A stretch of DNA of 64,000 nt from Zygnema circumcarinatum SAG 698-1b (Eukaryota; Plantae; Zygnematophyceae), in the NCBI GenBank assembly GCA_037447605.1, contig CM074812.1, positions 1,116,001-1,180,000 on the forward strand. Direction: 5' to 3'. The notes beneath the pieces were generated by a model. That model saw only the letters and a list, made by a program, of their open reading frames with translations. It had not been told where the DNA came from and made no database searches. The position numbers and the translations under genes were made by a program. Positions 1,069 to 63,937 of this stretch are shown one piece after another (position 1 is the first letter of the stretch; each line of letters opens with the position of its first letter).

Positions 1069-20501
<19,433 letters not shown>

Positions 20502-42998: not shown

Positions 42999-45900
42999 AT
43001 GTCCCAATCAGCTAAACAAGACAGGACCGACGTGCCGCCCAAGAGGTCTGTGAAGGGAGGGAGCCAAGGCACCCCTCGGCCAGGGGGTCCCTCCGGTATT
43101 AAAGGCGGTGGCGCCGCGGGGTCGGGAGGCGGCACTCGCGGACCTCAGAACGCTGGCCGCGGGTACATGAGATTTTTAACTTTCGCATCTTGTACTGCGC
43201 TTCTGAACTGAAGGACATTCCTTTCACGTTTTGCTTAGATAGATCCCTTTCCGGCATGCTCGGGAGTAGTGTTTGACACATTTTTCATCCTTTTCCGAGG
43301 GCCAGAATAGCTATTTTTCCTGTTACTAGACAACCAGTCTGAAGCTGCCCTTGTTTTCGTTATAGGCGGTACCTCTTACAATCCATCACCTGCAATGATT
43401 AGGTCAAAAGTGTCTTTGTCATGATTTAGGTCTGGCCTAAGGTTCCAGAAGAGCGCCTCAGATATGTATGGAGGAGGAGTAGTGGCTTGAGTAACTCCGA
43501 CTTTCTTTCAAACCGCAGTGAGTAAGGTTTGATTACTAAGAAACGGGTACCAGCTAGTCGACTGTTACTTAATGGTCAACTTGCAGTGATTTCAAATTCA
43601 ATGAAGTGTAGTCAAATATCTTTTCGGGTTGGACGTTTTCTTGTCGACCTTCTCCTCCAGCTGCCCGTTCGTACGTTGTGAAGAGGCCCCTTTTCCATGA
43701 TTATTGGCTCGGCCTTAAACAATATTAACGATCTCAAGCTACTCATTTCCATTTAATCTGCAATAGAGCCATTTGTACCACTGAAATTCTTAAATAGCAG
43801 AGAGAGAGAGAGAGAGGGAGTTCTCGAGCTTTCGCCCTGAACGATATGGTCAACTGCTCCTCTTGTTCTTGTGTTTTTTTCTTTTTCAACAAGAGCAGGG
43901 GAAGGGAGTGCCTTAGTCCTAATTTTGGCCTCCGGGTGTGATCAGGGGCCCTGCTAAGCGCGTACCTAGTGGATCAGCAAATGGTGGACGAAGCGGGGTT
44001 TCTCAGGATGTCGGAACTGTCAAGCCCAACGTTCAGGCGCAGCAACCAAGCGGCCCGTTGCCTGGTAACGTTTTTTCTCCGTGCTAGACAGGATGAAAAA
44101 CCCGAAAGAGAAGGAGCCCCTCATCGATAAAGGTGTAACAGATTGGCTTTTTTGAGCCCTTGAAAGAGATAAAAGTGCATTTGTTTAGTCAGGGATAAGC
44201 CAGGGGTCAGGGATCAGGCTCTGAGGGTTGATTTTTGCACGCTTATGACAGCTGGCGGCATTACGACAATCAGCTTAGACTAACTGAGGTTCACAAGGGT
44301 GTAGAGATAGAAATTGAATTATTATGAAGTTGCAGAAGCGAAACAGGTTTTGATTGTCAGGACGATATTATATTGGCCAGTCACTTGTTCCATATAGCAG
44401 ATGGGGCTTCCTTGTAGACACGAGAAGCTAGTTTTGCATAAATCGTAGGAGCTGTCCATTCGATTAAGCATTTTTCTGGATGTATAGCGCCTCGGAGGGG
44501 TGGTTACAGAGGACTTGAATACCTGAGCAGTATTGACTGCTTCTGAAGTTTGTCCACGTACATGTCCTTTTGGATCTGATTTGAATCTCGAGGAGGATCA
44601 GAGACACAGCAGTACTGTCATGAAAAGGTCACTGTAGCCTTCCTCCATTGCTTTCGCTAATTTCTGGTTGGCGTCACTGGATTTTCACATGAAACTACAC
44701 ATGGGAAATCGTTAATGCCCCCAAAAGCCAAAAGTCTTTGATGTGGGTTGCTCCTTAAGTGAAAGGTTATGGTTACGGCCTTTCCTATTTATTACTAGTC
44801 GGTAATTAGTGGAAATAATTTAACCTTACTGCTGCTTGATTATGTTTGTTAACTTCTCATTAGGGGTATGTTATCATAAAGGTCGCCAGTTATCTACGTC
44901 ATGGACTTTGAGACTTCTGTTTTCATTTTTGGAGATAGGAAAGAGTCACTTTTTGTGTGACTTGAATTAATCAGTTGTTCCAGCAAGGCATTGGCTGTCA
45001 AAGCTTTGACTGAAATCATAGCTAAATTGTCCATGTCTATGAGTTTAAACACGTGTGAACCAGGAAACCTTGGCTAGCTTGGTGGGACCTGCTCGCTGTA
45101 GACTTTGTTTTAATTTTTAGTATTCGGGTTCTACTCTTGGCATTGTCACATTCCCTTTCTACCACAACACAATCAGGCGAACAGATTTGCCCTTTTTTCC
45201 CCTTCAAGTTAGCACAACTATGCTGGATTCTTACACTGGATAGTTCTTTGTTTTTCTTCGCTGTATTGGTCAGAGCCTGAGAAAAGCGGCCAAGGAGCTG
45301 GTCGTCATCGATGATTGTTTTTAGAATCAATATCCTTAACTGTAAAATCTCACTTGCTTTTGCCTTTGCAACTCACGATTTGCAGCCCCTCGACAAGGTG
45401 AAGAACCAGTCGGGGAAAATGGACATGTTGGACCGCCGCTTCCCGACTTAAGCGCACCAATCAATGGAGGGGGGCAGTTGGCGACTTCGAACAGCGTCCG
45501 GACTGGCCCTGTTCCAGCCCCTGTAGCCGCCCCAGCCTTTCCTGGCAGTGGGGCTACGGCAAAGCCGCCTGTGCGTTCCTTTGCTGCAGCTGCAGCAAGT
45601 GCACCTTCCAGCTCTCTACCTCCAATAGGTAGGGAGAAGTGATGATGATGAGGAGAGCTGTTTTATAGAATCTTGTCTATTTTAGGAAATTTGAAACATT
45701 ACAGGAGGCACAATAGAACGGACACATGGGCCACAAGGATCTGTGGCGTCCGGCACCTTTCAGCCCAATGATATTCATCGGACGAGCAACCTCTTGTTTT
45801 TTGAACCTCCTCGTGGAGTCGCGCATGGCTGTTTATGTCAATGGCACAGATTAAATCATGAGCCAAACATTTTGCCGCATTTTTATGACATTGAGAGAAG

Positions 45901-48204
45901 TTTACCGTTGTCCTAGTTGTTATTGTTCCTTTGTCTTGTTTGGATGCGTCCTGCTATGTGGAGATCACAGGTTGACTTAAGTTTGGCATATTATCATTTC
46001 GTCAAATTTGCAGCTATTTGCTCGAGGCTGGCTGAAGTAGGATAGCGTGCAAGCATGTACTGAGGAACCGTCTCTCACCTTTGCTCTATTGCAGCATCCC
46101 CCCGGACAACAGCAGCGAAGCCATCAACACCAAGTGCTTCTGAGGTTGGAGGTCTGCAATTTGGAAGTTTTGGAAGTATTGTCCCCAACAATGTACTCCA
46201 TGTATGGCCTTGACTCTACTCGGGCTGGCCCTTCAGTTATTCAGTTACCCTAACCCTTCAGTTATGTCTGATATTCATTCGTCTGGCAATTCTCTTTCCG
46301 ACAAAACGATATACCCTTACCAACGTTTTTTTTATTTGGAGAACCGGCTTTGGTTTTGCAGGTCCCGCCAAGGACAAGCTCCGCACCTCCCAACCTAGAT
46401 GAACAGAATCGCGCTCGTGTAAGTACAAAACGAGCGTTTCTTTAAAGGATTATTTAGCTTTGTCATTGAATACGCTGTTCATTTGGAAATTCAGTCCTTC
46501 CATTCTTTAAATACTTTTATAGGTAAATGTCGTTTCTGGCTTTGGCTGGTGAAGTATGTACCACATAGAAGTTATAGGCCTAGTTTTCCAGGCACAAGTG
46601 CAATTGAGCTGGGTTTCTCCTGCAGCATCGAAGTTTTCATGTGGTGTCTTTGGAACGTTGTTCTTCCTTGGCTTATTACCTGATCTCAATCAGGATGTTT
46701 TGACGATACATTTAGTTTTGCCTTTCATGCGTGACTTAACATTCTAAGTTTGAACACCGTTTCAGGAGAAACAAGCGCACCTTGAGAGAGTCGATCCCCA
46801 AAAGAGACACCCACAGCAACAGACACCGCAATCAAAGGTTAGAGAATGGGACTTTTTCGCTTTATTTTGTCGTATTGGAGGCCTAACTTTGAGAAACACG
46901 CATTTCTGTCGAATGCTACTTGGAGGTCTGGGCTGTGAGTCACGAAGTCAATTGAGATTAATGCAAATTTTCTTTTCGCCGGGGTGAGGCGAGTCGAGAG
47001 AACTGTTGAATTGACTTAGGTGTTTATTTTCAACCGTTGGAATGGTCACAATTAAAAAGTTATATTATTGGCTCAACAGAAAGCGACACCTCTAGGAGTC
47101 TTTCATCAAGTCTTCTTTAGCACTGTATTGCAGTCTATGCATTCAACCGAGTGAACTCTGCATATAGCACGTAAATGCATGATGGGGTCATGAGCATGGG
47201 TATCCTGCAAGTCCTTTCGACAATGTCAAGTCATCAATTTCTTATGTTTCCTACAATCAAAGTTGATATTCAGGTTTACTCAGGAGGGTACCAAGTGAAT
47301 TTGAATGTATGTTCATAGTGGAGTGGGATCATAATGGCCTTAACTCATTTGGACTGTGTTTAATATTCGCACAGTCATCCGGTCTAGAGTTTTTCGTTTT
47401 CAATGGCTGCTAAAGATCACGGAGTAATCGAAAGTGATGCCATGCGTTACAGAACTGTGTGCAGTTGAAAGACATGTATGTGTGTGCTACGGACTGAAAG
47501 GAGATGTTACGGACTGAAAAACTGTTTGTATCGATTGTGTGTTGAATCTCTTGAACGATTTTTATGGAGCAGTAAGTAATATTCATGAAAGTCTCGTATC
47601 CCAGAGTAAGCAAGTTGGTTCAAACTTCCACTTCGGTTCAATTGCAGGCAGAGTTATTCGGGTTTTGAATTTTGCTTCTTTTTTTATCCATTTGGCATAC
47701 GTTTTCATAGGTCCTTATGCTCTCGTTGACCATCGACTCAGATTTTGACCAATTTGAGTAGCTAGCTAGTTTTTAATTAAATTTTTATATATGTACATTC
47801 AATCCAAGGGCATGAGTTGCACGAGGGCAACCGCTTGCAAGTGCTGCGGCTGACTTACTAGCAATAGGGGTCGAGTACATACTCTCTATGTGTCATTTTT
47901 AGGAAGGCGATTTCATGCACCTGCTGTAGGTAACCTGTAGGGCATACTGCATTATTCCAGCTAATGACACTTCCTTGTGATTTTAGCGACTGCTGCAGGT
48001 GGCATCAGGAGTTGCCGACACAACGATAAGCCAGCAACCTAGTGAGCAACGTCCGCCATCTAGTGAACCTATCTCAGAAGCAACAGGCCCATCTGCGGCC
48101 GCACCGGTTCCGAAGCCTCATATCGGTCCCCAACTCCCAACTCAAGCTTTGGCTCCACCTCCACTTCCACCTCCAAACCATTCAAAACCTGAAACCGATG
48201 CATT

Positions 48205-48235
<31 letters not shown>

Positions 48236-51200
48236 GTCCGGCTTGCTCAGCAAATGCAGGCGCATGAGCATGCTTCCTCACAAGGAGGGCAGCAGACTCC
48301 CCAGCAGGGGTATGCTCAAGCATATGGTCCTAGCCATAGTGCTCAATCCCATCAACCACCAATGCAGGAGAGGAAAAGTGTGAGCAACAGCAGTGGCCCA
48401 ATGAGAGTTAGCGGCCTGCAGGGACAGGGCCACGGAGGGTCTAGTCATAGCATGGGAACTGGGCCTCAGTCCCAATTGCCCGTATCGGGTAGCCATACAG
48501 CGCTGCATGGGCCGCATGGTGGCGCAAGTTTGGGTCTCCAGCCACCACAGAATCTGCAGGGGGTTGTTGCTAGCGGACATCATATGTTGCAATCACAGCA
48601 ACAACAGCAGCAGCAGGCAATGAAGTATCCTATGCAGGGGGTCCCCGTGGGTAACCAGCATGCCAATCAGCAGCAGCAGCAGATGATGACTGGACTCCAC
48701 ATGCGGCAAGTGAGCGGCAATCAGGCGGGGGTTGGCGGGCAAACTTATGGCCCAGGTGGAAACTTCAATCCAGGAGTTAGTTATGGCACTCCACAAGTTC
48801 AGCCTCGTGTGAGCAAAGCGATAAAGATTGTCGACCCAGTTTCTAAGGAGGAGGTAAAATTGGATCCTCCGAAACCATCCAAAAAACTGGAGGCAATGAG
48901 TGGACCTAACTCAGGCAGTGAGACTGTTGGGACTGCCACTATTGGTGGTGCATCAGTTCTTAATCAAGGTCTTGCTGGAAGGCCTGGCTCGTCAGGAGGA
49001 ATTCAGCCTCCACAGAGGCTTCCGTACGCCCAACCTCCGCAGGCATACTTCAACCAGAGTCAGTACCAAATGCAGTACATGCCCAAAGCAGGGCCGCCTC
49101 CTCAAGGGACACCAGGAGTTATTCCTGGGCAAAACCGGTATCCAGCCGGATACAATGGCCAAGGAATGGGCGTAACAGGATTGACAAACTTAGGTCAGTT
49201 TTCTGTACAGGGTGCAGCGCTGGGGGCAAAGCCGGGTGACTTGGGAGCTAATGGGGTTAACCATATGTTTTTTAGTCAGGGTATGGGCCCCAACATGATG
49301 CCGCAGCCGCCAATTGGAGGTCTGGGAGCCATGAATCTGAGAGGGGGACAAGGTGTGTCTCATCAGTTGCCAGCAGGCATGGCGCAGTCTCGCCAAGCAA
49401 TGCCGGGAATGGCTGGTGGACCTCAGGGCAAACCTTCATTGGGAACTCCTCAAGGAATGGGGACTGCTGGGATGCCTCTCAACTCACTAATGGATCCCAA
49501 CATGCCAACAGGGCCAGGTTTTGTGTTGCAAGGCGGGTCGGAAGGAAGTATGGTTATGATAAACCCAGCAGATAAGCAGGCAGCCTATGCTGGGGTGGCT
49601 GGGAATGCTATTGGTGGTAGTTTCTCGTCGGTTTTGAGCAGTAGTATGCAGGTCCCTGTCCGGGGTCCCGTGCCCACTGGAATGCTTCCAGGAAATCAAG
49701 TAGGGGTTCGCCCTCCTAGTCAGCCTCCCGGTTCTAAGCCCGGGACTCCAACAGGGGGCAGACAAGCTACAGGTGCGATGGGCAGTGCTGCTCAGCCCCT
49801 TAAACAGTTGGATAATGGTGGCAGTGGAAAACCTGGAGCAGGGATGGTCAGGGATCGAGAGGCGGCCGGATCACAACAACAGAAAAAGGGAAATAAGAAG
49901 TCTGGCAGACAACAGCCTGGGTCGACGCAGGTTCTGACTCAGCAGGTTGTTGGCCAAGGACAAGTCTCTTCTCAGAATGTATCAGCAGGGAATGCGTGGA
50001 TTCAAACTGGCAGCAGCATGTCGACAACTGTTGAAGATGCCCCCCCTGTAGTGGAGGGAAATGTTTCTGGTAGTTCTTTACCTGCGATAACTCCAGCAGT
50101 CCTTTCTCCTGCGATTGTGAATCCGCCTCCCACAGGTTGGGTTTCAGGAAATATGGCAAATAGACGCCCCTCAGAAGCATCAGTTTCTGGGGGCTCTGCA
50201 CCTGCTGGGCCACATGCAGTTAGAAGTCCGCAGGTCTCTCAAGGTGCTCGAGCTCAAGGAAACACTCCAGTGGTTTATGCCAACCAACCCACCTCGGGAA
50301 TGGGGGGCCGCCCAATAGTAACAATTTCGCCACATGATGGCAGTGGGTGGAGCAAGGATGTAAAGCAAGGAGACGCTGACATGTGGCCAGCAGATTCTCG
50401 CCAGATGCCGGCGGTCGATGTTTCAGCAGCAGATGGGAAGTCTTCTGAGTCAGTGGTTAAACCGGACGTTGAAGGTATCTCAGTCTCAGCTGATGACCAA
50501 GGCGAAACACCTTCACAAGCTATTCGGCTTGACACCTCAGACCATGCGAAGCCCCTTAGTTCTCCAATTGAGTTGGAAGCAACTGTATTGACACCTGCTA
50601 CTGGAGTTTTACCCACTGCTGCAATGGCGGCAGCAGCGTTGCCTCTGCATTTGGAGCGACCTAGTGAAGGAGAAGAGGCCTTTCAGCACGCTGCCATTGA
50701 AGGAGCGAATGGTCAACTTCGTTCTGAAACTCGCAGCTTGCCTCCAGTTTCTGATGCGGGCATTGCATCAAGCTCGGGAACTGACGTTTCTAGCATCTCC
50801 GGTGAGTCAGCTTCAGAGGTGGAGGCCATGGAATCTGATGTACGTTTAAAGTCGACTTCGTCCGAGGCAGACATTCCATCGACACCTGCTCCGACCCCGA
50901 TTCCTAGTCGGGAGTCCTCTATGCATGGTGAATCGACTATTCCCACAGAGAGTTTAAGTGTCGACACATCAAGGATTATGCCAGAACACAGTGCGGATGC
51001 AGTTGAGGCTCTGACTGGCGTCTCCAAAGAGCCGGTTTGGGGAAAGAGCGCTGATGCAAAGCACACAGAAAATTTGGATGTTGTGAATCAAGAGTGGCCA
51101 GCTCTTTCTTTAAGCTCTTCATCAAAACCTCGTTCCATGAAGAAGACAAATAGCACGGATATGTTGAGCACTGTTGATGGCTCTCTTGACATTCGTACAC

Positions 51201-54200
51201 AAGGGGCTGCAGATTCTGAAGAGACGAAAATCGCAGAGGATGGCATTGCTACAATTGCTGTGGAGAAGAGTCAAGAGAAAATCGAAATTGAAGAAACTCT
51301 GTCGACAGTACCGGAGGGGGAGAGTGCATTTGGTAATGCACCAGCGGAGGCAGTTGAAGGAGAGTTGCCTCCTGCCGGCTTGCTTAGTGTACATGCTGTC
51401 GTTGACATTGCTGGGGCAGGAGAGGTCCCTCTGGAAACTGAAGTTTTGGATCAGAATGCGGTAGTCATATCAAAGGACACTTTGCCCGATGTTGTAGATG
51501 AAGCTTCAAGGGAAACTGGGTGTGGGGTAGTCAGTGGTGAGGAAACAACTTCTATGTTGCCAATTGATGCTTCTTTGAGTCCCCCCAAACCTGAAGGTTC
51601 TGAGCCCTCTGATGTGGAGGCGACCGCAGTTGAAATTCCGTCGGTAGAGGTTAGTTCTGTGGTGGTGCAGGGAAGTGCTTCACCTATAGCAGAAGATAGT
51701 GTTGCTGCGCTGTCTGTGAAGGAGGAAGCAAATGCTCCTCTTATAGTGACTTCAGAAGTTGATACTGGTGAGGAAAGTAGAAAATCTGACAGGGATGATG
51801 ACAGCAGCACGACAGCGATTGCAGGTGCTGTTGTAAGTGAAGAATTGGGAGGTAGCACTCAAGCCTTTGCTTCTGATGACACCACGCATGCGACAACAAT
51901 CACACACGGTATAGATGGAATGGAGAACAGTGTAGGAGAGAGGCCGCATGCTGAAGCAGACCCTCCAGGAAAAGATGTGTCCGGTGCTGTTGAATCAGAT
52001 TCTCCTGAGGAGGAGGCGCAGGCTGGTCAGGGAGGGCCCGAGAGTTTATCGACATCAGAGGGAGGCGCGGACCCTTCAGAAGGAGGAGAAGAATGCAGAA
52101 TAGAGAAGGGTGAGGCAGCGACTGAAAGTGTGGAGGTCACTGGAGGCAATTCTGAAGGATCGGCCGAAGATCAACATGCAGCACAGGTGGAGCCAGAAAA
52201 GGGATTGAGCGGTGCTAGTGGGGCTTCGGCTGCAAGCAAGAAGAAGAAAAGGAAGGACATTCTTGCAAAAGCAGATGCAGCGGGCAACCAGAGCGACCTT
52301 TACAACGCATACAAAGCTCCCGAGGAGGAAAAGAAAGCGGATGACAAGGAAACGACAGAAATAAGCGGTAAAGCAGATAAATCCAAAGATGTTCCGAAGA
52401 AAGGATCCACTGTCTTTGTTGAAAAGCCGTCATCGGCAGAGCCGGATGATTGGGAGGATACTGCTGATTTGCAGACCACAAAGGTGACACCAACGGGAGC
52501 TTCGACTGCAACTCGTGAAGAACCCCGTGCTGCAGACGAGGCAGAGCAAGAAAACATAGAGAAGAAGAAGACCTACACTAGGGATTTCTTGTTCACTCTA
52601 CAGTACCATTGCGGTGAACTAACACTTGAAAAGAGGAAAGCCATTGGTGATGATTTACTCGACAAAAATCCTGCCTCAACCCCAGTGAAAACTCCGGGAG
52701 GAGGAGGAGGCGGAGGAGGTGGAGGGGGAGGAGGAGGAGGAGGAGGAGGGAGAGTGGTTGACCGCAGCAAAAGCATGCGAGAAGGGGGGATGGATGACGA
52801 CAGGTGGGCAAAGCCTGGAGGGGGAACTCCTACAAGAGGTGGCCCTATGTCCGGGGATGTCCGTTTAGATGCGGGAGCAGGAGTTATGGGAAGCTTCAGA
52901 CCCGGAGGATTGGGGTTGGTTTTTCCTCCTCAATTGAGGCCAGGTTTCCCCCCCGGTCTGCAGGTCCCACAGGGGCTGATGGGAATTGGGCCACTTTTGA
53001 GGCCCGTAGGGCCTGTGGTAGTGCGGCCAAATGGCATAGATGCTGACAGGTGGCAGAAGGCTCCCATGCAGAGAGCCGCCCAGCCTCCTGCACGCGTCCC
53101 TTTGCCAGCCATGCACAAGTCGGCAAATCGATATGAGGTTGGGAAGGTGTCGGATGAGGAACAAAAGAAGCAACGGGCGATCAAGGGAATTTTGAATAAA
53201 CTTACGCCACAAAACTTTGAGAAGCTGTTCGAACAGGTACGTTTTTGTCCTCCCTCGACCGGCGATGCAATAGTGACATCAGCAAATAACTGAGACATGT
53301 CGAAAAAGTGGAAGCATGTCAAATTCTTGAATCGTGTGGCTTTCATATAGTGCAGTCTCCATTGCCTCTTGTTGACCCTTTGAAATTGTACTGCTTTGGG
53401 CAGGTTAAGGAGGTTGGCATCGACTCCCAGGAAACTTTAATTGGTGTCATTTCCCAGATTTTTGACAAAGCGCTTTTGGAGCCCACTTTCTGTGAGATGT
53501 ATGCGCAATTTTGTAAAGCCCTGTCGGAAGAGATGCCCAGTTTTGAGAATAAGAACGAGGCGGGTGTAGTTGAGAAGGTTACATTCAAACGAATTCTTCT
53601 GAATAAGTGTCAAGAAGAGTTTGAGCGGAACATCAGTGAAGAGGCAGCAGCTATGAAGCAACAAGAAGGGGAGGAGGAGGTCACCGAGCAGCAGTTGGCA
53701 GCGAGACGGCTTAAGGCGCGGCGGAGGATGCTCGGGAATATTCGATTCGTTGGAGAGCTTTTTAAGAAGGGCATGCTGTCGGAGCGCATCATGCACGAGT
53801 GTGTGTTGAGGCTGCTTGGGGATGTGGAGGTAAGCAGGCGTCTCCCAGTATGTAACAGAAAAGAAAGTGAGGTAGAGAAGGGAGACGAGATGGGTTACGG
53901 ATGTTCTTTTTCCTTTTCTGTTTTGGGTCCTTCATCAAATTTTTCAGATCGAAGTGGGTTCTATAAAGCCAAGGGTAGAAGAGTCTGAATATAGAGTTAT
54001 CGTCGTCCTCCTCAGTGGTGGGATTAAGTATATGGATTCTGTAGAAATTTCTGTTTCACCGTTGGTGCTCCATACTTCAGTTCCAAATGCTCAAACCTTA
54101 CTGTTTTGCACTTGTATCTGTATGTTCTCTTGCATCGACATCCTCTGTCAGTAGTGAAGTTCTAGGGAATCTTGTCTGCTACATTACGAGCTATCGACAT

Positions 54201-57200
54201 TTTGTCAGTCAAGTGACCCATTTGTTGGAAGTTGGGGCCTTTCAGAATCCGGATGAGGAAGATGTGGAGGCGTTGTGCAAACTCATGGCCACCATCGGAA
54301 GCATGCTGGACCATCCCAAGGCAAAGCAGCACATTGATGCGTATATGAGCTTCATTGACTCGCTCTCAGTTAATCCAAAGCTGCCGAGTCGGATCAGGTT
54401 TGCTTTGAAGGATCTCCTCGACTTGAGAAGGAATCAATGGCAGGCAAGGCGAAAGGTTGAAGGCCCCAAAAAGATCGAAGATGTTCATAGGGATGCAGTG
54501 CGGGAGAGACACGATGCCGTTGCCAATGCAGGCAGGCAGATGATGGACAGGTCCTCCTCTCGTGGTGGAAGAAGATCAGACATGGACGCGCCCTCTTTCA
54601 GAGGCCCTCCGCCTATGAGGGGCGGAATGGCTGCTCCGCCACTGTTCCCTACAGGCCCTCCTAGAGGTGGTCTGCCGGGAGGTCTGAGTGGGAGACCGGG
54701 GCTTGAGTTGAGAGAGGAGACTGTGATTCCTCTCCCATTGAGAAGGGAAGAAGGAGACATTAAGTTGGGTCCACAGGGCGGTTTGGGAAGATTGGCTCCC
54801 GCAGGAAGGCCAATGGGAGGCTTTGCAGGTCCACTTCGGAGTGCTCTCACTGATTCCGCTCCACCATTGTTGGGAGAGAGGAGACCTGGGCTTGTTGGGC
54901 CATCACAGTCTGCAGGGAGAGAGGGAGAGTTGGGACTTAGACCCCTGGGAGTGGACAGGGGGAGCTTCGACCGATCAACCGCATTTGACCGCAGTAAGGT
55001 TGATAGCCGCGGAGCTGCTCCTGATCATGACAGATCAGACCGACCTCCAGAAAAGGGAGTAGAAAGGCCAAGTGAGAGGACCTCGGAGGCAGCGGGAGAG
55101 AGGCCGGCTTCACGGCCCGTAACACCGCCTGCCCCATCTCCTGCTCTACAAGAAGCTCCGCAGCTCTCAGAGGAGGAGATGAATCGGAAAAATGCAGCAA
55201 CCTTTACGGAGTATCTGAGGTGGGTCAACTCTTGAACTGTCTGAGTTTGAGCATAGCGGGCACCTGGTAGTGGCTTTCCATGTTTACCAGCTATCCCAAG
55301 TTAATTGGTGGTTAACCAAAAGCCAGTGGTTAGCTAGTGGTTTAACCAACAACACCCAAGTGGCTTTTTCTGACGAGTGTCAATTGTTTCAAAACAGGTG
55401 TGCTGCTCTCCTCACTTCATGTGGCATTTCCTGTGCAGCTCGAAGGATCTGAACGAAGCTGCAACCTGCGTGGAAGAGCTTAGACATCCTGAGTCTCATT
55501 CGCGCACTGTATTGAGCTGGTTTATTACGGCCCTGAATCAAAAGTCGTCACAGAATGCTCCTGCTGCATTGGCGGACCTTTTTGTGGCTCTATCTACCCG
55601 GACCCCGCCTGTATTCACCACCGAGCATTTAATCAAGGGGTAAGAAAAACGACTTGACTTAAAAAAGCTGCTTTCTGTGCTTTTCAGTGGCTGTGATTTC
55701 ATCCAATGACAACGAGCTGATACGTGCTGTAGGCTTCGCGTTGTTTAAACTCCCCTTCCCCTCCCTCCTCCCCCTCCCTCATTCCCCCCCCTTCCCCTCC
55801 TACCTCCTCCCTCGTTAGGTATGTCTGGTTTCAACACCTTTATTGATGTTAAGGCAAAATGTGCCTATACAGCTGATGCATTATATGATTGAGTTGTTGG
55901 GTGGCAGTTTTGAGCTCGTGTTGTATCAGCTCGAGGATGTGACTGTGGATGCGCCCAAGGCCCCAAGTCAGGTCGGTGGATATATGGGCCGACTCGCTGC
56001 AGCGGGAGTACTGCCACTTGCTGCCATTGGGAAACTCCTAAAAGAAGGGGGAACAGAGCGCGGTTCATTAGTGGAGGAAGGCATAGCGATAAGCGTTCTT
56101 GAGGCAGTCTTGTCTGCGATCAAGTTAGAGAAGAACGAGGAGGGGTTGGCGGAGCTTTGGAAAGGGTCTGCGCTGAAAGTGGAGGACTTTTTGGAAGAGG
56201 AGATGCGGCGGAATCCCGCTGTCGTGGATTCGTTCTTGGAAAAGTTTGGGCTTCTGCAGATGCTTAGACCGGTACAAGCTTACTTAACAACCTGTAGCAT
56301 AGACCTGCGGCAACCAGTACTCAATTGATAACTCGCAGCAGTCTGCATGGAGGGTCTCAGATTTACGTTACGAATGGCTGCACGCCAAGCAGTTCAATTG
56401 CATTGTTCAGTACTTATTTTCTAAATTGCTTGTCCAAAGTAAAACTCTTAACCGAGGTTTTTTTTTTTCATCTCTTTGTGGGGTGGGTGGGGAATGGTTG
56501 GTCTTCTGCAGCTTGCTGCAGTCGAGAAGTATTTGGACGAAGCTTTTGCGAGTGGCGTTTCAACAGATGAAGTGAGCAAATGGTTAGAGGTGCGGTTCTC
56601 GCCCACTCAACCCTGATGCTTTTTGCATGCAGAACGAGAAGATGTTAAGTATAGCCTGTAGTTTATGCATGCAAGGCACGTCCAGATGTTTTGTTAGTTG
56701 CAATTTATTGATTTCCATTGCCACTTGATGGCTTAGGGACGCTTAAGGGAAACTTTTGTCACAGTTGTAAAGTTAGTTGAGCTCAGATGGAGAGTTTTAA
56801 GTTCTCAGAGATGTGCAGGCTTTGGAACTGAACTTGCTTTTAATTTGTGTGGGAGGGGGTGATGTGGGCAACAGAGCAACCTGCCCTCCGCTTCACAAGG
56901 CAGCCATGAATTTTTTCGAGTCCTGATGAAGCGGCTCTTGCAAAGTGCGCTGCAATTACAAGGAGAAGCGGCTTCCGATTCGTCCGTAAGTTTGTTATAT
57001 ATATTTTCTCTTTCTCCTTAATGAATGCCAAGGTGTCTGTTTGGCGAGTCTGTCTGCATACTTTAGTGTGAGACAAGCCTATCGTGTGTTTGCCTTCTAT
57101 TCGTCCTTCGATATTGTGTGGGGATGCATTTGACTTACTATGGGTAAAAGGCTCCATCCGATTAACTCTTCCGCTCGTTTTACTGACGGCATTTCAGCAT

Positions 57201-58764
57201 TTCATTATTAATGTCTTTTCAGGAGAACCGTGGTGACTTACAGGGCCCATCTTAAGACTGAATTGCTGATTTGTTCAAGTAGAAATGAAGGAGCATCTTA
57301 TCATTCTGGTTTAATAACACTCTTATTGTCAGTTCCGGCCAAATACAGGAGCTCTACCTGACCTTAATCAGTAGCTTAGACATTGATGTCAACTCGATGG
57401 CCCCTTGGAATGAAGGTTTCCCTTTCTTGGGCCGATGGTCCAAACAAACAAGCAATAGGCTGCACAATGACCATAATCTGAAATTCTCCGGTCTTATGCC
57501 AAAGCTGATGAAGTGCTTCACACTCTGCTTTGTGGCTCAAGCAGATGTACGCATCACAAATAAAGAAATACAGCAAGGTTCTGGAAAAGTCAGCAGCCGG
57601 CAAGAATACGAAGGCAAACCAATTGCAGTGTAAGTGCAAGCGGGCTAAAAACTGAGTCCGGAAGTCTTTCTGGAAGGCATATGGCAGCAGGCGGTCGGTC
57701 TCTTAGGGGGAATATGATCTTTTCTGCATTTCTTGGGAAATCGCTACACTGTAACTAAGGGCAATCCTTGAAGGGCAATTTGCATGAAAGATGACCTGCT
57801 GCTGGTGGGTTTTTTGTTGGGAAGCAGACCTCTTCGCCGTGCAACACTTTGCTTTTGAGATTGCAAGCGGTGGAACGTACCCTGCGGGCCTTCCAAAGGC
57901 CATTTTTGAAGCGCTGTACCACTCTGGGGTAGGGAGAGCTTGCCCTCTTTGTACTTCTGCATTCTTGAAGCTGTAGAATCAATCTTTGAATGCGCATAAA
58001 CATCCTCAGGGTGGGGTATGATTTTTCTGGAACCTTCACGGTGCTTCAATCTGACTTTGCGTCAGTCTGAAATGAAAATGTGTGGAGGAAGGGAGGAAAC
58101 TCCCGTCTCGAATCTCGAAGTGAAGAAGAAAAAATGATTGAATTGAATGTTCGGATGTTGGCACTATTTTTTCGATGTCCACCGAACGCCTTTTTAACCA
58201 AAAGAGCGAGTGGACTTTGGGCGGCCTTCTCGCTTGCAGGCAGTGCGAGACTCCTTCATGTTGTGGAAAGACGACACAAAGGAAGAATTAGGAAAGAAAG
58301 AGGTAAGGATGCCCTCTGCCTCTCCACTGAATTTTGGAATGAAACAAGCAGTCAGACATAACGTCGCTCTGAAGCCCCTGACATGCAACAAAGGAGAGCA
58401 AGTATATGGTGAAAACGCAATATTTCATCTATGAAACTTCAACCTTTTCGAGAAAGAGCGTCTCAAAGTGAAGGAAAACTCCGAAAAATTGAAGTGAAAA
58501 ACTCAAATATCTTTGTCACACCCCTGTGGCCTCATTCTTGCGTTTTTTGGGGCAACAATATCGATTAAATACATCTCCCATACCTGATTTGAATCCTCCC
58601 TCCACTAGATGGAGCAAATCGGGGGCCATTACAGTAGGTGGGGCACTGACTTAGAAAGTTTTATAAATATGAATATCAGCACGAGTGCGAGCGAAATAAT
58701 ACATGAAGCGAAACCAGAAGTACTGCTGTCAAAATAATTTCTGTATTGCGACATAATAACGCTG

Positions 58765-58798
<34 letters not shown>

Positions 58799-58958
58799 NN
58801 NNNNNNNNCCCCCCCCCCCCCCCCCCCTCCCTTCCCCCCTATTGTGTCTGTTTCCCTGCCTGCCTGTCTGCCTTTTGCAGGCCTGGCACGACCTGCACAA
58901 GTGGTACAGATGGCTGGAGGAGGAGATGGAGAAGGAGGAGGAGGAGGAGGAGGAGTGA
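42999..58958 (+). CDS. EIF4G: Eukaryotic translation initiation factor 4G, plant-type N-terminus, MIF4G + MA3 + W2 (about 18 exons, ~2800 aa)
   Basis: LQFGSFGSI..VPPRTSSAPPNLDEQ (46095-46200, ~46362-46415), KAIKIVDP (PABP-site-like), KKKKRKDILAKADAAGNQSDLYNAYK, EPDDWED, 4E-binding YTRDFLF (~52573). MIF4G exons 47999-53236 (end), 53404-53829 and 54246-; MA3 exons 55439-55639 and 55908-56270. W2 exons 56512-56589, 56875-56985, 57545-57629, 57828-57928, 58240-58302 and 58881-58958. Confidence 0.95.
58799..58808. other. Assembly gap (10 N) within poly-C in the last eIF4G intron
   Basis: N run flanked by C homopolymers. Confidence 0.95.
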
Positions 58959-59633
58959 GGAGCTCCATCTCCATCTCCGCTGCTCGCCGTAAAGGGCGGG
59001 GCTGCTCTGACTGCGCCTCCTGGCAGAGAGGCGGAATGACTTGTACAGTGCAAAATTTGGACACGCAGACAGGGCACAAACATTCATTGTATCTTTCACG
59101 TCTAAATTTTTTTTCACCTCTCGGCTCAACCTTGCCGTGGTTGATGTGTCTCCAGAAACTCACACTCTTCGCATTATACGTGATGGTCTCCTTGTTGTCT
59201 CCTTGGAGCCGTGATGCCCTTCATGGTATCATCACATGAATGGTCTTCCTACAGCGGACTTTCGCACATGTGCTAATGTCAGTCACTGAATCGACTATGT
59301 GTATGTTGGGTTCTCAGTTCCAAGGGCTTTCAAGCTTTAACTTTCGTGTTTTGAAGCATGAATGTTCTTACAGCGGTCTTAAATTGGCAAAGAAGCGGTC
59401 TACTGAAAAAAGCTAATCTTTGGTCTTCACTTCATAAGGTATCCTCTGTGAAGGAAAAGAAAATTTGGCAGTTGTCCTACGCATGGCGATGCCATGAAAG
59501 GTACACGGACCAAAAGCAACACTGGGAACCACGAGGGACCCACCGCTCTCAAAGGACCCCTCGGGACAATAGAAAACTGCAAATGTTTTGTGGGCCAACA
59601 TGGGCTCTTCATGCCCATTGTGGGCGCCTCTGC

Positions 59634-59774
59634 GCACGTGGAGGCCCATTGTGACACGTGGCGATCCCCCATTGGCCGAGCTTTCCCAAGTAAGCAGCAT
59701 GGATCCGCGACGACCTCCCATTGGCCGAGCCACTCCCCAAGGACGAGCATGGGCACGTGGCGCGCCCCTATTGG
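59634..59774. promoter_or_regulatory. ERSE-like array (CGTGG-N9-ATTGG) upstream of gene X, copy 1
   Basis: Exact sites at 59657-59675 and 59756-59774; a degenerate site at 59706-59724. Confidence 0.6.
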
Positions 59775-59938
59775 TCGATCCGCCCCCACATTCCCGGGCG
59801 ACGGTCCCTCCCCGCCAACGGCCAAAGCAGTGCTCGCAAGTGCGGGGGCGCTAGGTCCGGCGGCAGTTGTAGGCCCTGCCAAACGCTGGGGAGGAGGAGC
59901 AGGAGTAGAAGCAGGAGCAGGAGCACGAGCAGGCAGCC

Positions 59939-60130
59939 ATGGCGGGCGAGGGCGAGGGCGAGGGCAGGGGCAGGGGCAGGGGCGAGGGCAGGGGCGGGGG
60001 CGAGGGCAGGGGGAGGGGCGGGCTCAGGGTGGCTCTCATGGTGGCGGCCTTTCTGATGGCGTGCTGCGAGGCCGCGAGGATGATGCTGCGGGCGGCGGAG
60101 CGGAGACTGGATCAGTTGGAGGAACTTATA
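59939..60130 (+). CDS. First exon of gene X (signal-peptide-like), truncated copy; possible first exon of a chimeric gene X/eIF4G transcript
   Basis: [37 protein letters not shown] is homologous to 63764-63937. The homology breaks at ~60110; candidate phase-0 donors gtgcgc (60131) and gtgcgt (60137). Confidence 0.55.
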
Positions 60131-60179
60131 GTGCGCGTGCGTGCTTTTGCATGCTCTGTTGTAGCTTCCTGCTTGACCA

Positions 60180-62771
60180 TTTCAGTTATGTCTGATATTG
60201 ATTTGTCTGGCGATTATCTCTCCAACGAAACGATATACCCTTGCTGCTCTGCCACTGAGAGTCACTGTGAGTCACAAAGTCAATTGAGATTAATGCAAAT
60301 TTTCTTTTCGCCGGGGTGAGGCGAATCGAGAGAACTGTTGAATTGACTTAGGTGTTTAGTTTCAACCGTTGGAATGGCCACGATTAAAAAGTTATAGTTT
60401 TGACTCAACAGAAAGCGTCTTTCCGTTACCTCTCCCTAGGATTCCTTCATCGAGTTTTCTTTAGCAACGTATTGCATTCTATGCATTCAACCGAGTGATC
60501 TCTGCATATAGCACGTAAATGCATGATGGGGTCATGAGCATGAGTATCCTGCAAGCCCTTTCGACAATGTCCAGTCATCAATTTCTTATGTGTTCTACAA
60601 TCAAAGATGATATTCAGGTTTACTCAGGAAGGTACCAAGTGACTTTGAACGTATGTTCATTGTGGAGTGGGATCATCATGGCTGAAACTCATTGGGACTG
60701 TGTTTAGCAGTAACACAGACATCTGCCCTAGAGATTTTCGTTTTTAATGGCTGCTACAGATCACGGAGTTATCCTAAGTGGTGCCATGCGTTACAAAACT
60801 GTGCACTTCCTTGTGATTTTAGCGACTGCTGCAGGTGGCATCAGGAGTTGCCGACACAACGATAAGCCAGCAACCTAGTGAGCAACGTCCGCCATCTAGT
60901 GAACCTATCTCAGAAGCAACAGGCCCATCTGCGGCCGCACCGGTTCCGAAGCCTCATATCGGTCCTCAACTCCCAACTCAAGCTTTGGCTCCACCTCCAC
61001 TTCCACCTCCAAACCATTCAAAACCTGAAACCGATGCATTGCAGCAGCAGCAGCAGCATCATGTCCGCACTGCTCAGCAAATGCAGGCACATGAGCATGC
61101 TTCCTCACAAAGAGGGCAGCAGACTCCTCAGCAGGGGCATGCTCAAGCATATGGTCCTAGCCATAGTGCTCAATCCCATCACCCACCAAAAGGAAAAGGA
61201 AAAGGAAGGAAAAGAAAAGAAAAAATAAAAGGAAAAGAAAAAGAAAGGAAGAGTGTGAGCCACAGCAGTGGCCCAATGAGAAATAGCGGTTTGCAGGGAC
61301 AGGGCCACGGAGGGTCTAGTCATAGCGTGAGAACTGGCAAGTGGCAGAAAGCTCCCCTGCAGAGAGCCCCCCCGCCTTCTGCACGCGTCCCTTTGCCAGC
61401 CATGCACAAGTCGGCAAATCGATATGAGGTTGGGAAGGTGTCGGATGAGGATCAAAAGAAGCAACGGTCGATCAGAGGAATTTTGAATAAACTTACGCCA
61501 GAAAACTTTGAGAAGCTGTCTGAACAGGTACGTTTTTGTCCTCCCTCGACTGGCGAAGCAATAGTGACATCAGCAAATTACTGAGACATGTCGAGTTAGT
61601 GGAAGCATGTCAAATTCTTGAATCGTGTGGCTTTCATATAGTGCAGTCTCCATTGCCTCTTGTTGACCCTTTGAAATTGTACTGCTTTGGGCAGGTTAAG
61701 GAGGTTGGCATCGACTCCCAGGAAACTTTAATTGGTGTCACCTTCCAGATTTTTGAAAGAGCGCTTTTGGAGCCCACTTTCTGTGAGATGTTTGCTCAAT
61801 TTTGTAAAGCCCTGTCGGAAGAGATGCCCAGTTTTGAGAATACAAACGAGGAGGGTGTAGTTGAGCAGGTTACATTCAAACGAATTCTTCTGAATAAGTG
61901 TCAAGAAGAGTTTGAGCGGAACATCAGTGAAGAGGCAGCAGCTATGAAGCAACAAGAAGGGGAGGAGGAGGTCACCGAGCAGCAGTTGGCAGCGAGACGG
62001 CTTAAGGCGCGGCGGAGGATGCTTGGGAATATTCGATTCGTTGGAGAGCTTTTTAAGAAGGGCATGCTGTCGGAGCGCATCATGCACGAGTGTGTGTTGA
62101 GACTGCTTGGGGATGTGGAGGTAAGCAGGTGTCTCCCAGTATGTAACAGAAAAGAAAGTGAGGTAGAGAAGGGACAGGAGATGGGTTGCGGACATCCTCT
62201 GCCAGTAGTGAAATTCTAGGGAATCTTGTCTGCTACATTACGAGCTATCGACATTTCGTCAGTGAAGTGACCCATTTGTGGGAAGTTGGGGGCTTTCAGA
62301 CTCCGGATGAGGAAGATGTGGCGGCGTTGTGCAAACTCATGACCACCATCGGAAGCATGCTGGACCATCCCATGGCAAAGCAGCACGTTGATGCGTATAT
62401 GATCTTCATTGAATCGCTTTCAGTTCATCAAAAACTGCCGAGTTGGATCAGGTTTGCTTTGAAGGATCTCCTCGACTTGAGAAGGAATCGATGGCAGGCA
62501 AGGCGAAAGATTGAAGGCCCCAAAAAGATCGAAGATGTTCATAGGGATGCAGTGCGGGAGAGACACGATGCCGTTGCTAATGCAGGCAGGCAGCTGATGA
62601 ACAGGTCCTCCTCTCGTGGTGGAAGAAGGAAAAGGTGACCTCCTTCCCCCCCTATTGTATATGTTTCCCTGCCTGCCTGTCTGCCTTTTGCAGGCCTGGC
62701 ACGACCTGCACAAGTGGTACAGATGGCTGGAGGAGGAGATGGAGAAGGAGGAGGAGGAGGAGGAGGAGTGA
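60180..62771 (+). pseudogene. Internally deleted tandem duplicate of eIF4G retaining the MIF4G domain (pseudogene or young chimeric gene)
   Basis: Matches, in order, 46256-46320, 46935-47460, 47968-48462, 53047-53900, 54135-54584 and 58828 onward. Exons 60835-61527, 61695-62120 and 62300-62638 are open with intact GT/AG sites. Confidence 0.92.
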
Positions 62772-63910
62772 GGAGCTCCATCTCCATCTCCGCTGCTCGC
62801 CGTAAAGGGCGGGGCTGCTCTGACTGCGCCTCCTGGCAGAGAGGCGGAATGACTTGTACAGTGCAAAATTTGGACACGCAGACAGGGCACAAACATTCAT
62901 TGTATCTTTCACGTCTAAATTTTTTTTCACCTCTCGGCTCAACCTTGCCGTGGTTGATGTGTCTCCAGAAACTCACACTCTTCCCATTAAACGTGATGGA
63001 CGCCCTTTTGTTTCCTTGGAGCCGTGGGCCATGGTATCATCACATGAATGGTTGAACCACCGCGGACATGCGCACATGTGCTAATGTTAGTTACTGCATT
63101 GTCTTGTGTTCTCGGTTCCAAGGGCTTCCAAGCTTTCATCTTCGTGTTTTGAAATATGAATGTGCTTACAGCGGTCTTGAATTGGCAAAGAAGCGGTCTA
63201 CTGAAAAAGGCTAATCTTTGGTCTTCACCTCATAAGGTATCCTCTGTGAAGGAAAAGAAAACTTGGCAGTGGTCTCACGCATGAAAGGTACACGGACCAA
63301 CAGCAACACGGGGAACCACGAGGCACCCACCGCTCTCAAAGGTCCCCTCGGGACAACGTTAAAGTGTCAAAGGTTTTGTGGGCCAGCATGGGCTCTTCAT
63401 GCCCATTGTAGAGCCGCTGTGCACGTGGCGAGTCGTCAGTGGCTGATTCAACGGCCGAGGAGGATCCTGCATACGTGGCGAGTCCCCAATGGTTGAGCTA
63501 CTCTTGAAAAAGCATTGGCACGTGGCGACCCCCTATTGGCGGAACCAGCTCCTGAGTAAGGTGCATGGACACGTGGCGAGTCCATTGGCCGAGCCGCCCC
63601 CGCATTCCGCCGTGGCCCCGGGCGACGGTCCCTCCCCGCCAACGGCCAAAGCAGCGTTCGCACGTGCGGGGGGGCCTGCTCCGGCGGCAGTTGAAGGCCC
63701 AGCCAACGGCCGGGGGAGCAGGAGCAGGAGCAGGAGCAGGAGCAAGAGCAGGAGCAGGCAGCCATGGCGGGCAAGGGCGAGGGCGAGGCCAGGGGCAGGG
63801 GCGGGCTCAGGGTGGCTCTCACGGCGGCGGCCTTTCTGATGGCGTGCTGCGTGGCCGACGTGGAGGCCGCGAGGAGGATGCTGCGGGCGGTGGAGCGGAG
63901 CGGGGAGGAG
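62640..63910. repeat. Second copy of the eIF4G last exon, 3' region and gene X promoter (homologous to 58828-60110)
   Basis: AWHDLHKWYRWLEEEMEKEEEEEEE exon duplicated at 62694-62771; downstream sequence alignable with scattered substitutions and indels. Confidence 0.95.
63424..63590. promoter_or_regulatory. ERSE-like array upstream of gene X, copy 2
   Basis: CGTGG at 63424, 63474, 63521 and ~63572 (~48-bp period), followed after 9 nt by AGTGG, AATGG and ATTGG respectively, and after 7 nt by ATTGG for the last. Confidence 0.6.
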
Positions 63911-63937
63911 GGGGAGAGTGGCACGTGGGACCATCAG
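63764..63937 (+). CDS. First exon of gene X, predicted secretory-pathway protein, probably continuing beyond the window
   Basis: MAGKGEGEARGRGGLRVALTAAAFLMACCVADVEAARRMLRAVERSGEEGESGTWDHQ|gttggt: basic n-region, hydrophobic core, then an AxA-like cleavage context; phase-0 donor. Confidence 0.6.

What the first reader, a model, noticed from the sequence alone, without database searches (positions are those of the whole stretch)
59939..62638. Candidate new chimeric gene: MIF4G-only mini-eIF4G fused to gene X exon 1
A tandem duplication of ~46256-60110 joined gene X's promoter and first exon to the interior of eIF4G. Phase-0 donors (60131, 60137; gtgcg donors are used elsewhere in this window) match the phase-0 acceptor at 60835. 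Exons 60835-61527, 61695-62120 and 62300-62638 are all open with intact splice sites, giving ~549 aa. An exactly in-frame 4584-bp (1528-codon) deletion removes the PABP-like and eIF4E-binding motifs, and a second deletion removes MA3 and most of W2. What remains is a complete MIF4G (eIF4A/RNA-binding) core. That resembles the eIF4E-independent architecture of DAP5 or protease-cleaved eIF4G, and could promote cap-independent translation or act as a dominant negative, possibly under ER stress. Against function: by eye ~22 replacements versus only ~6 silent changes in the two MIF4G exons suggest relaxed constraint, and a retained signal sequence might misroute the protein.
Basis: partly seen in the sequence, partly recalled or inferred. 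Interest (0 to 1): 0.85.

Follow-up and report, generated by a model that had tools for sequence, protein, structure and literature searches.

The report
Transcribed, decaying truncated eIF4G duplicate
A partial tandem copy of the translation factor gene eIF4G, cut down to its MIF4G domain and placed behind a copied neighbour's promoter, is really transcribed and spliced. The proposed fusion splice is not seen, and the protein sequence is drifting like a pseudogene's.

Summary
The sequence observation holds at nearly every coordinate. A ~13.85-kb unit (46257 to about 60105) is tandemly duplicated. The second eIF4G copy carries an in-frame 4584-bp deletion and a 4251-bp deletion. A 549-codon frame is open, and the MIF4G domain is complete.

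Public RNA-like assemblies from three studies bridge every rearrangement junction. They show copy-specific, GT..AG-spliced introns 2 and 3 at high depth.

The key interpretive step fails. No contig joins 60130 or 60136 to 60835, whereas all three runs carry that stretch unspliced. Gene X's real donor (63937) lies outside the duplicated segment. With this leader, 24 AUGs precede the first in-frame AUG of the MIF4G frame.

The coding sequence shows no purifying selection:
- dN/dS against the parent is 0.7-1.1.
- Of 20 polarisable replacements, 18 are derived in the copy, seven at positions invariant in 119 plant eIF4Gs.
- A purine microsatellite has expanded inside the frame.

Patchy divergence indicates gene conversion from the parent, which helps explain the open frame.

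Best reading: an expressed partial-duplicate pseudogene, or at most a very young gene. A functional MIF4G-only protein is not excluded. The scan noted this stretch once before (s1-387199), without follow-up.

The parts
45385..59130 (+). Parent eIF4G gene. It has small 5' exons including the PN1-motif exon 46362-46418 and exon 46766-46837. The giant exon is 47999-53236, the MIF4G exons are 53404-53829 and 54246 onward, and the last exon starts about 58880. Both gene ends are approximate. There is an assembly gap of Ns in a poly-C run at about 58780-58826.
   Evidence: RNA loose ends match the parent's exon ends (46837 and the penultimate exon).
59560..59938 (+). Duplicated promoter and 5' UTR of neighbouring gene X, with two perfect ERSE-type elements (59657-59675 and 59756-59774, on the minus strand).
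   Evidence: Alignment to 63353-63774. Motif search found 4 matches in the window against 0.07 expected. Depth in X3 rises from 1.9 (59650-59795) to 91-181 from 59796 on.
59939..60105 (+). Truncated copy of gene X exon 1: ATG, expanded GAGGGC repeat and a hydrophobic N-terminal stretch. It lacks the native donor.
   Evidence: The true exon 1 is 63775-63937, with its donor at 63937 confirmed by spliced contigs in X1 and X3.
60106..60175 (+). Junction filler of unknown origin. It contains the two proposed cryptic donors (60131 and 60137).
   Evidence: Unique in the window. No homology to gene X or to the parent.
60176..60834 (+). Remnant of a parent eIF4G intron. Internal deletions removed two small parent exons. 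It is transcribed as an unspliced leader.
   Evidence: Contigs X1 60038-60862, X3 59793-60862 and X7 60046-61058 have 0 mismatches, and no joint into 60835 arises from within the locus.
60835..61527 (+). Exon 2: the start of the giant exon fused by the 4584-bp in-frame deletion (junction 61334-61337) to the start of MIF4G. It holds a copy-specific purine-rich insertion at 61190-61252 (63 nt replacing 15). The first in-frame AUG is at 61081.
   Evidence: Copy-specific contigs are X1 61029-61168 (depth 57) and X3 60833-61179 (depth 346).
61528..61694 (+). Intron 2, removed in RNA.
   Evidence: Joint 61524>61692 (GT..AG with the cut +3, i.e. 61527/61695) at depth 263 in X3 and 22 in X7. Intron depth is 9 and 0.9.
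61695..62120 (+). Exon 3, the MIF4G core.
   Evidence: Pfam MIF4G 86 bits. Copy-specific contigs are X3 61797-62101 (depth 447) and X7 61692-61842 (depth 45).
62121..62299 (+). Intron 3, removed in RNA. It is 237 bp shorter than the parent's intron.
   Evidence: Joint 62118>62298 (GT..AG with the cut +2, i.e. 62120/62300) at depth 319 in X3 and 17 in X7.
62300..62638 (+). Coding part of exon 4: the end of MIF4G plus the H1-CT motif. The deletion-2 junction lies at 62628/62639, and filler 62629-62638 supplies the stop at 62636-62638.
   Evidence: Motif consensus from PMC3352336. Contigs X3 and X7 62548-62721 are contiguous.
62639..62936 (+). 3' UTR. It is built from the remnant of the parent's last intron (62639-62693), the out-of-frame last eIF4G exon (62694-62770) and the parent-type 3' UTR. 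The RNA 3' end is near 62936 in X7.
   Evidence: In X7 an adapter sequence follows 62936 and depth falls to 0 after 63008.
63775..63937 (+). Exon 1 of the true gene X. The rest of the gene lies beyond the window.
   Evidence: Contigs of 2.45-2.5 kb in X1 and X3 end on 63937 and continue into an unseen exon 2.

Best explanation
A 13.85-kb tandem duplication (46257 to about 60105) copied most of the plant-type eIF4G gene together with the promoter and most of exon 1 of its downstream neighbour, gene X. The second eIF4G copy then lost its N-terminal motif exons. It also lost 1528 codons that include the eIF4E-binding site, and everything after MIF4G.

Shown: the copied, ERSE-bearing gene X promoter lies just upstream of where RNA coverage begins. 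The RNA runs to about 62936. Introns 2 and 3 are spliced correctly. The 0.9-kb stretch between the copied ATG and exon 2 stays in the RNA.

Inferred:
- Scanning ribosomes would start at the copied gene X AUG (59939, good context). They would stop after 126 codons inside the former intron.
- The MIF4G frame sits behind 24 upstream AUGs, so it is translated poorly or not at all.
- The coding sequence evolves without purifying selection.
- Occasional gene conversion from the parent, plus some luck, keeps the frame open.

Overall it is an expressed partial-duplicate pseudogene, or a proto-gene at the earliest stage. It is not an established chimeric eIF4G isoform.
For: RNA:
- Copy-specific contigs with 0 mismatches and GT..AG joints at both internal introns, seen in X3 and X7.
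- An unspliced leader in X1, X3 and X7.
- No joint 60130 or 60136 to 60835 in any run.
- Near-silence at 59650-59795 (depth 1.9 in X3, 0 in X7), which argues against read-through from the parent.

Gene X's native donor is not duplicated. There are 24 upstream AUGs, and a 126-codon first ORF.

Selection:
- dN/dS is 0.8-1.1 over MIF4G and 0.7-1.0 over 453 codons.
- 18 copy-derived against 2 parent-derived replacements, relative-rate p = 3.5e-4. They include R1K, Q55E, F61S, K85R, Y96F, E213A and R254W at positions 100% conserved in 119 plant eIF4Gs.
- Copy-branch omega is about 1-2, not different from neutral.
- Exon divergence (4.6%) equals flanking intron divergence (4.6%).
- A 63-nt purine microsatellite sits inside the frame.

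Gene conversion: 1 difference in 237 nt (60804-61040) and 1 in 235 nt (61867-62101), against 8-9% in neighbouring patches and 7-11% in flanks.
Against: The frame is still open after 4-9% divergence. The chance of no stop is about 0.12-0.18 for 40-50 neutral substitutions. The big deletion and the microsatellite insertion are both multiples of three, roughly 1/9 together.

The RNA is abundant. In X3 the copy's path wins the assembly bubble over the parent's. In X7 the copy reaches 0.4-0.7 of the parent's depth.

Both splice sites of both internal introns are kept.

Exon 2-4 depth exceeds the leader's (346-450 against 91 in X3, 57 against 12 in X1). A second start site nearer exon 2 is therefore possible.

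Contig data cannot show absence of a rare spliced form, and no translation data were available.
Confidence: 0.6

Rival explanations
1. A functional MIF4G-only protein is made, but not. Translation starts at AUG 61081 (403 aa) from transcripts that begin inside the leader or by some non-scanning route. The protein binds eIF4A or RNA without eIF4E, PABP or MA3/W2. It would act as a stress-induced modulator or dominant negative, and its fast evolution reflects a new function.
For: The frame is open and its indels are in frame. The MIF4G domain is complete and the H1-CT motif is retained. Expression is high and splicing correct. Exon 2 is deeper than the leader, which allows an internal start site. 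Copy-branch omega of 1-2 is compatible with positive selection. The promoter carries ERSE elements.
Against: Seven replacements fall at positions invariant across land-plant eIF4Gs, including core aromatic and charged residues. Omega is not significantly above 1. Even a start site close to exon 2 leaves out-of-frame AUGs at 60747, 60786, 61034 and 61061. In X7 the leader and exon 2 have equal depth (16.3 against 15.9). No related short protein was found in the protein collection.
Confidence: 0.2
2. The copy's exons 2-4 serve as alternative terminal exons of the parent gene. The parent's exon ending at 46837 (phase 0) splices across about 14 kb to the identical acceptor at 60835. That would give a short eIF4G isoform with the true N-terminus but no eIF4E site.
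For: Contigs in X1 and X3 join the parent's exon end to the first bases of exon 2. The acceptor and the next 131 nt are identical in parent and copy, so these contigs cannot be assigned to either. The phases match. Exon 2 is deeper than the leader.
Against: In X1 the parent's upstream-exon contig has depth 22, while the copy-specific exon 2 has 57 and the shared segment 72-74. At most a small share of copy RNA could therefore start at the parent's promoter, though word depths are rough. Depth at 59650-59795 is about 0-2. A 14-kb intron across the parent's own polyadenylation site would be far outside the 170-1100-bp introns seen here.
Confidence: 0.1
3. A cryptic donor at 60130 or 60136 is spliced to 60835. 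This yields a 549- or 551-aa protein with gene X's signal-like N-terminus fused to the mini-eIF4G, perhaps only under ER stress.
For: All phases fit and the frame is open. GT dinucleotides are present at both sites. The acceptor is intact and identical to the parent's. The promoter copy is active.
Against: No such joint appears in three runs from three studies, although joints of the two other introns are recovered at depth 17-319. The native donor is absent, and the proposed donors lie in filler DNA. The same lack of constraint applies to the coding sequence.
Confidence: 0.07

Closest known systems
Transcribed partial-duplicate pseudogenes and young chimeric genes made by tandem segmental duplication
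   Same: A tandem duplication has breakpoints inside two neighbouring genes. The neighbour's promoter and first exon end up in front of an internal fragment of the other gene. The result is expressed, evolves at dN/dS near 1, and undergoes gene conversion with the parent. An earlier unchecked note of this scan (s1-328776) reports a similar 'short-form' TGS1 duplicate in the same genome.
   Different: The expected fusion splice is not made, because the donor of the captured exon was left behind. The captured exon and former intron act as a long AUG-rich leader.
DAP5 / eIF4G2 (p97, NAT1)
   Same: An eIF4G relative that lacks the eIF4E- and PABP-binding N-terminus and keeps MIF4G.
   Different: DAP5 is an old, conserved gene with MIF4G, MA3 and W2 under purifying selection (established knowledge). 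This copy has MIF4G only, is recent, derives from the neighbouring canonical eIF4G, and shows no constraint.
Plant eIFiso4G
   Same: A shortened eIF4G paralogue of the green lineage (PMC3352336).
   Different: eIFiso4G keeps its own eIF4E-binding site, MIF4G, the H1-CT motif and MA3, and it is conserved from green algae to angiosperms. The copy has no eIF4E site and no MA3.
SLIP1 / MIF4GD and other single-MIF4G proteins
   Same: The architecture has one MIF4G domain and little else.
   Different: Those are separate, anciently diverged families (knowledge, not tested here). The copy is 95% identical in DNA to its parent eIF4G.
Protease-cleaved eIF4G C-terminal fragment (picornavirus 2A/L, caspase)
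   Same: It lacks the eIF4E/PABP part and retains the eIF4A-binding middle domain.
   Different: The cleavage fragment keeps the eIF3-binding linker, MA3 and W2. Here everything after the H1-CT motif is gone.

Membership tests
eIF4G family (paralogue of the neighbouring gene) | Nucleotide-level colinearity with an eIF4G gene, including its introns | tested here: met
   Five colinear blocks at 88-96% identity, with introns included. The parent's best protein matches are plant eIF4Gs.
eIF4G family (functional member) | eIF4E-binding motif YxxxxL-phi upstream of MIF4G | tested here: not met
   The parent's KKKTYTRDFLF at 52574 lies inside the 48463-53046 deletion.
eIF4G family (functional member) | MA3 (HEAT-2) domain after MIF4G | tested here: not met
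   Parent 54575-58825 is missing. The frame stops 10 nt after the breakpoint.
MIF4G domain (PF02854) | Match above the Pfam gathering score over the whole profile | tested here: met
   Exon 3 scores 86 bits (profile 28-130) and exon 4 scores 35.8 bits (138-202), against a cut-off of 30.8. The first about 27 profile positions lie at the end of exon 2.
MIF4G domain (functional) | Conservation of family-invariant residues and purifying selection | tested here: not met
   18 copy-derived replacements, seven of them at positions invariant in 119 homologues. dN/dS is 0.8-1.1.
MIF4G domain (functional) | Binding of eIF4A / RNA | not testable with these tools
   Needs a pull-down or a structure. Interface residues were not mapped.
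Chimeric (fusion) gene | A transcript that joins the exons of the two source genes in frame | tested here: not met
   No joint 60130 or 60136 to 60835 in X1, X3 or X7. The stretch is carried unspliced. Contigs can miss rare forms.
Chimeric (fusion) gene | Transcription from the captured promoter | tested here: inconclusive
   In X3 coverage starts between 59796 and 59831, just downstream of the copied ERSE elements, and is near zero upstream. There are no 5'-end data.
DAP5 / eIF4G2 | MIF4G + MA3 + W2 architecture and orthology to DAP5 | tested here: not met
   Only MIF4G remains, and the copy derives from the adjacent canonical eIF4G.
Expressed duplicate pseudogene | Loss of coding constraint relative to the parent | tested here: met
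   Relative-rate 18:2, p = 3.5e-4. Exon divergence equals intron divergence. A microsatellite has expanded within the frame.
Expressed duplicate pseudogene | A disabling lesion (stop or frameshift) in the frame | tested here: not met
   The frame 60835-62638 is open across all three exons. The disabling feature is the missing start and leader context, not a lesion in the frame.

The most novel reading that the evidence does not exclude
The mini-gene is a newborn, ER-stress-inducible MIF4G-only factor. It would be translated from an internal start or from a rare or condition-specific fusion splice. It would titrate eIF4A or promote eIF4E-independent initiation, and its many replacements at otherwise invariant MIF4G positions would reflect adaptive divergence rather than decay.
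Probability: 0.12. Interest if true: 0.7.

Novelty: new member of a known kind. Interest (0 to 1): 0.3.

Why it matters
If the mini-gene only decays, it is an ordinary case, though a clean and well-documented one. It shows how a tandem duplication with breakpoints inside two genes gives a fragment of an essential translation factor a new, stress-type promoter. It also shows why such a fragment usually fails to become a fusion gene: the captured exon came without its splice donor.

It matters for annotation. An automatic pipeline would readily call a 549-aa 'eIF4G-like' protein here.

If a MIF4G-only protein is made, it would be a natural experiment on eIF4E-independent eIF4G function in the green lineage, arising independently of DAP5.

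Tried and rejected
1. Assembly artefact: rejected. Independent contigs bridge all three junctions.

2. Exons better conserved than introns, which would indicate constraint: rejected. BLAST identities suggested it. Ungapped counts show that introns 2 and 3 (4.6%) equal the MIF4G exons (4.6%). The contrast is regional and patchy, which fits gene conversion.

3. X7 'variants' as strain polymorphism of the copy: rejected for three of the five places. At 62024, 62490 and 62510 the X7 contigs carry the parent's letters, and those are the only copy/parent differences within the contigs. They are therefore the parent's own transcripts, which passed the 97% filter. The places 62578 and 62594 belong to the unexplained X7 form listed under things noticed in passing.

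4. Read-through from the parent as the source of the RNA: unlikely, because depth at 59650-59795 is about 0-2.

5. Searching the protein collection for an annotated or assembled product of the copy led nowhere:
- Exon 2 as query.
- The 126-aa leader ORF as query.
- No close relatives of the parent were found for a DNA outgroup. Synonymous changes therefore could not be polarised, and only amino-acid changes were.
Searches were coordinate slips that were corrected.

6. Structure prediction of the spliced product and a look-up of its exact sequence were not run. A spliced protein has no reference here, and I did not type long sequences.

7. The origin of the 70-nt filler was not found in the window.

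Full report
**What is in the sequence**

Self-comparison of the window and pairwise alignments show a tandem duplication whose unit runs from 46257 to about 60105.

- The first unit holds a large plant-type eIF4G gene. It has small 5' exons, a giant exon at 47999-53236, MIF4G exons at 53404-53829 and from 54246 on, and a last exon near 58880. Its best protein matches are land-plant eIF4Gs, about 65% identical over MIF4G.
- After that gene come the promoter and most of exon 1 of a neighbour, 'gene X'.
- The second unit starts at about 60176, in what was an eIF4G intron. It ends in the true gene X at 63775, whose exon 1 is spliced at 63937 in RNA contigs.
- Between the two units lie about 70 bases (60106-60175) that match nothing else in the window.

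**How the second eIF4G copy is reduced**

- Two intron-side deletions remove the small exons 46362-46418 and 46766-46837. The first of these carries the plant 4G-PN1 motif, whose consensus comes from PMC3352336.
- A 4584-bp deletion (parent 48463-53046, exactly 1528 codons) removes the PN2-like motif and the eIF4E-binding site KKKTYTRDFLF.
- A 4251-bp deletion (parent 54575-58825) removes everything after the H1-CT motif. Ten filler bases follow and end in TGA.
- The remaining exons (60835-61527, 61695-62120, 62300-62638) are open and in phase. They contain a full MIF4G domain by Pfam.

With the copied gene X ATG at 59939 and a donor at 60130 or 60136, the frame would give 549 or 551 aa. So is the count of 22 replacements against 6 silent changes.

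**RNA evidence (four runs laid at 97% likeness or more; contigs, not reads)**

Runs X3 and X7 behave as RNA. Exons stand at depth 350-670 in X3 and 30-200 in X7. Introns stand at 9-19 and 1-11. The promoter-side stretch 59650-59795 is near zero.

- Contigs with no mismatch cover many copy-specific positions: X3 61797-62101, 62298-62474, 62445-62577 and 62548-62721, and X7 61692-61842 and 62298-62474.
- Two GT..AG joints, 61527/61695 and 62120/62300, are present at depth 263 and 319 in X3 and at 22 and 17 in X7.
- The copy is therefore transcribed and its two internal introns are removed correctly, in data from two studies. A third study (X1) shows copy-specific exon 2 at depth 57.
- An adapter sequence follows 62936 in X7, which places an RNA 3' end near 62936.
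- A contig from a run labelled as another organism (X2) bridges the 61337 deletion junction without mismatch.

**The fusion step is not seen**

- No run shows a joint from 60130 or 60136, or from anywhere in the leader, to 60835.
- Single contigs instead run unspliced from the exon-1 copy into exon 2: X3 59793-60862, X1 60038-60862 and X7 60046-61058.
- The only spliced sequence arriving at 60835 is the end of the parent's exon at 46837. The acceptor and the next 131 nt are identical in parent and copy. This is most simply the parent's own mRNA.
- The reason is visible in the DNA. Homology to gene X stops at 60105 (= 63900), 37 nt short of gene X's real donor. The proposed donors are chance GTs in filler.
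- With the leader retained, the copied gene X AUG (good context) opens a 126-codon frame that ends inside the former intron.
- In all, 24 AUGs precede the first in-frame AUG (61081) of the MIF4G frame, which would give 403 aa.

**Evolutionary evidence**

- Against the parent, dN/dS is 0.8-1.1 over the 314 MIF4G-region codons. It is 0.7-1.0 over all 453 alignable codons, with 40 replacement and 14 silent codons.
- I polarised the 32 MIF4G-region replacements with 119 plant eIF4Gs. The result is 18 derived in the copy, 2 derived in the parent and 12 unresolved. The relative-rate test gives p = 3.5e-4.
- Seven of the copy's changes hit positions invariant in all 119 sequences: R1K, Q55E, F61S, K85R, Y96F, E213A and R254W. 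I79T sits at a 98% conserved position.
- The copy-branch omega is about 1-2 and not distinguishable from neutrality.
- Exons and their flanking introns are equally diverged, 4.6% each.
- A purine microsatellite has expanded inside the frame, with 63 nt replacing 15.

Divergence is strikingly patchy.

- There is 1 difference in 237 nt at 60804-61040. That tract includes 31 nt of intron and a poorly conserved N-terminal stretch.
- There is 1 difference in 235 nt at 61867-62101.
- Neighbouring patches show 8-9%, and upstream intron remnants, the 3' region and the promoter show 7-12%. The Fisher test for the region against the flanks gives p = 4e-5.

This mosaic is what gene conversion from the parent would leave. 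It also helps explain why the frame is still open.

Chance alone keeps a frame of this length free of stops in about 12-18% of simulations with 40-50 substitutions. The two in-frame indels add a factor of about 1/9. Openness is therefore mildly surprising but not compelling. The locus was also picked because it is open.

**Promoter**

The copied upstream region holds two perfect CCAAT-N9-CCACG elements, the ER-stress response element consensus from established knowledge. The true gene X promoter has one perfect element and several near-perfect ones. The window holds four perfect matches against 0.07 expected.

**Verdict**

The locus is a real, expressed, correctly spliced partial duplicate of eIF4G reduced to MIF4G and driven from a captured promoter. 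The chimeric protein is not supported. The actual transcript is badly suited to translate the MIF4G frame, and the protein sequence shows loss of constraint.

My odds:
- Expressed pseudogene or proto-gene: 0.6.
- A MIF4G-only protein made from another start: 0.2.
- Use of the copy's exons as alternative terminal exons of the parent: 0.1.

**Limits**

- Word depths are rough.
- There are no 5'-end, ribosome or peptide data.
- There is no DNA outgroup.

The same stretch was noted once before in this scan (s1-387199) without follow-up. Another note reports a comparable expressed 'short-form' duplicate of TGS1 in this genome (s1-328776). I did not check that note.

Noticed in passing
window 62548-62721 (run X7): Besides the window-identical form (depth 64), X7 holds a more abundant contig (depth 210). 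It has the parent's letters at 62578 and 62594, and no difference is listed at 62600. It also has a joint 62628>62692 that skips 63 nt with non-canonical GA..GC ends. It could be a second allele or a further copy of the mini-gene with a different 3' junction. X3 lacks it.
   Followed up: partly
window 63616/59793 (run X3): One 1995-nt contig joins 62692-63616 directly to 59793-60862 ('goes back 3824'). It does so through a 38-nt stretch identical in the two gene X promoter copies. This is most likely a de Bruijn mis-join across the repeat, but a further tandem repeat of the mini-gene unit in that strain is not excluded. It also shows RNA coverage from the mini-gene's 3' end up to gene X's promoter.
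   Followed up: partly
window 59657-59774 and 63423-63590: There are clusters of CGTGG-N9-ATTGG (ERSE-type, CCAAT-N9-CCACG on the minus strand) upstream of both gene X 5' ends. Three are perfect, and several are imperfect ACGTGGCG-N-ATTGG units. Gene X, with its hydrophobic signal-like N-terminus, looks like an unfolded-protein-response gene. The rest of it lies beyond the window.
   Followed up: partly
window 37419-41981: A 27-bp tandem repeat of about 170 copies (67% matches) spans 4.5 kb. One frame reads as a nonapeptide unit (YNGWLPAIG-like), so this is possibly a very long repetitive coding exon. Strand and gene were not determined.
   Followed up: no
window 58780-58826: A poly-C run interrupted by ten Ns (an assembly gap) sits in the parent eIF4G's last intron. 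It lies exactly at the right-hand breakpoint of the copy's second deletion.
   Followed up: no
window 46362-46418 and 48821, 52574: The parent eIF4G carries recognisable plant motifs: 4G-PN1 (VPPRTSSAPPNLDEQNRAR, on its own small exon), a PN2-like IKIVDPVSKEEVKLD and the eIF4E site KKKTYTRDFLF.
   Followed up: partly
window 3915-4747, 6962-7373, 12836-13462: Long microsatellites: (GA)418, (ATGGGGC)~60 and (GGGAGG/GGGAAGG)~95. The GAGGGC-type repeat in gene X's exon 1 is related to the last of these in composition.
   Followed up: no
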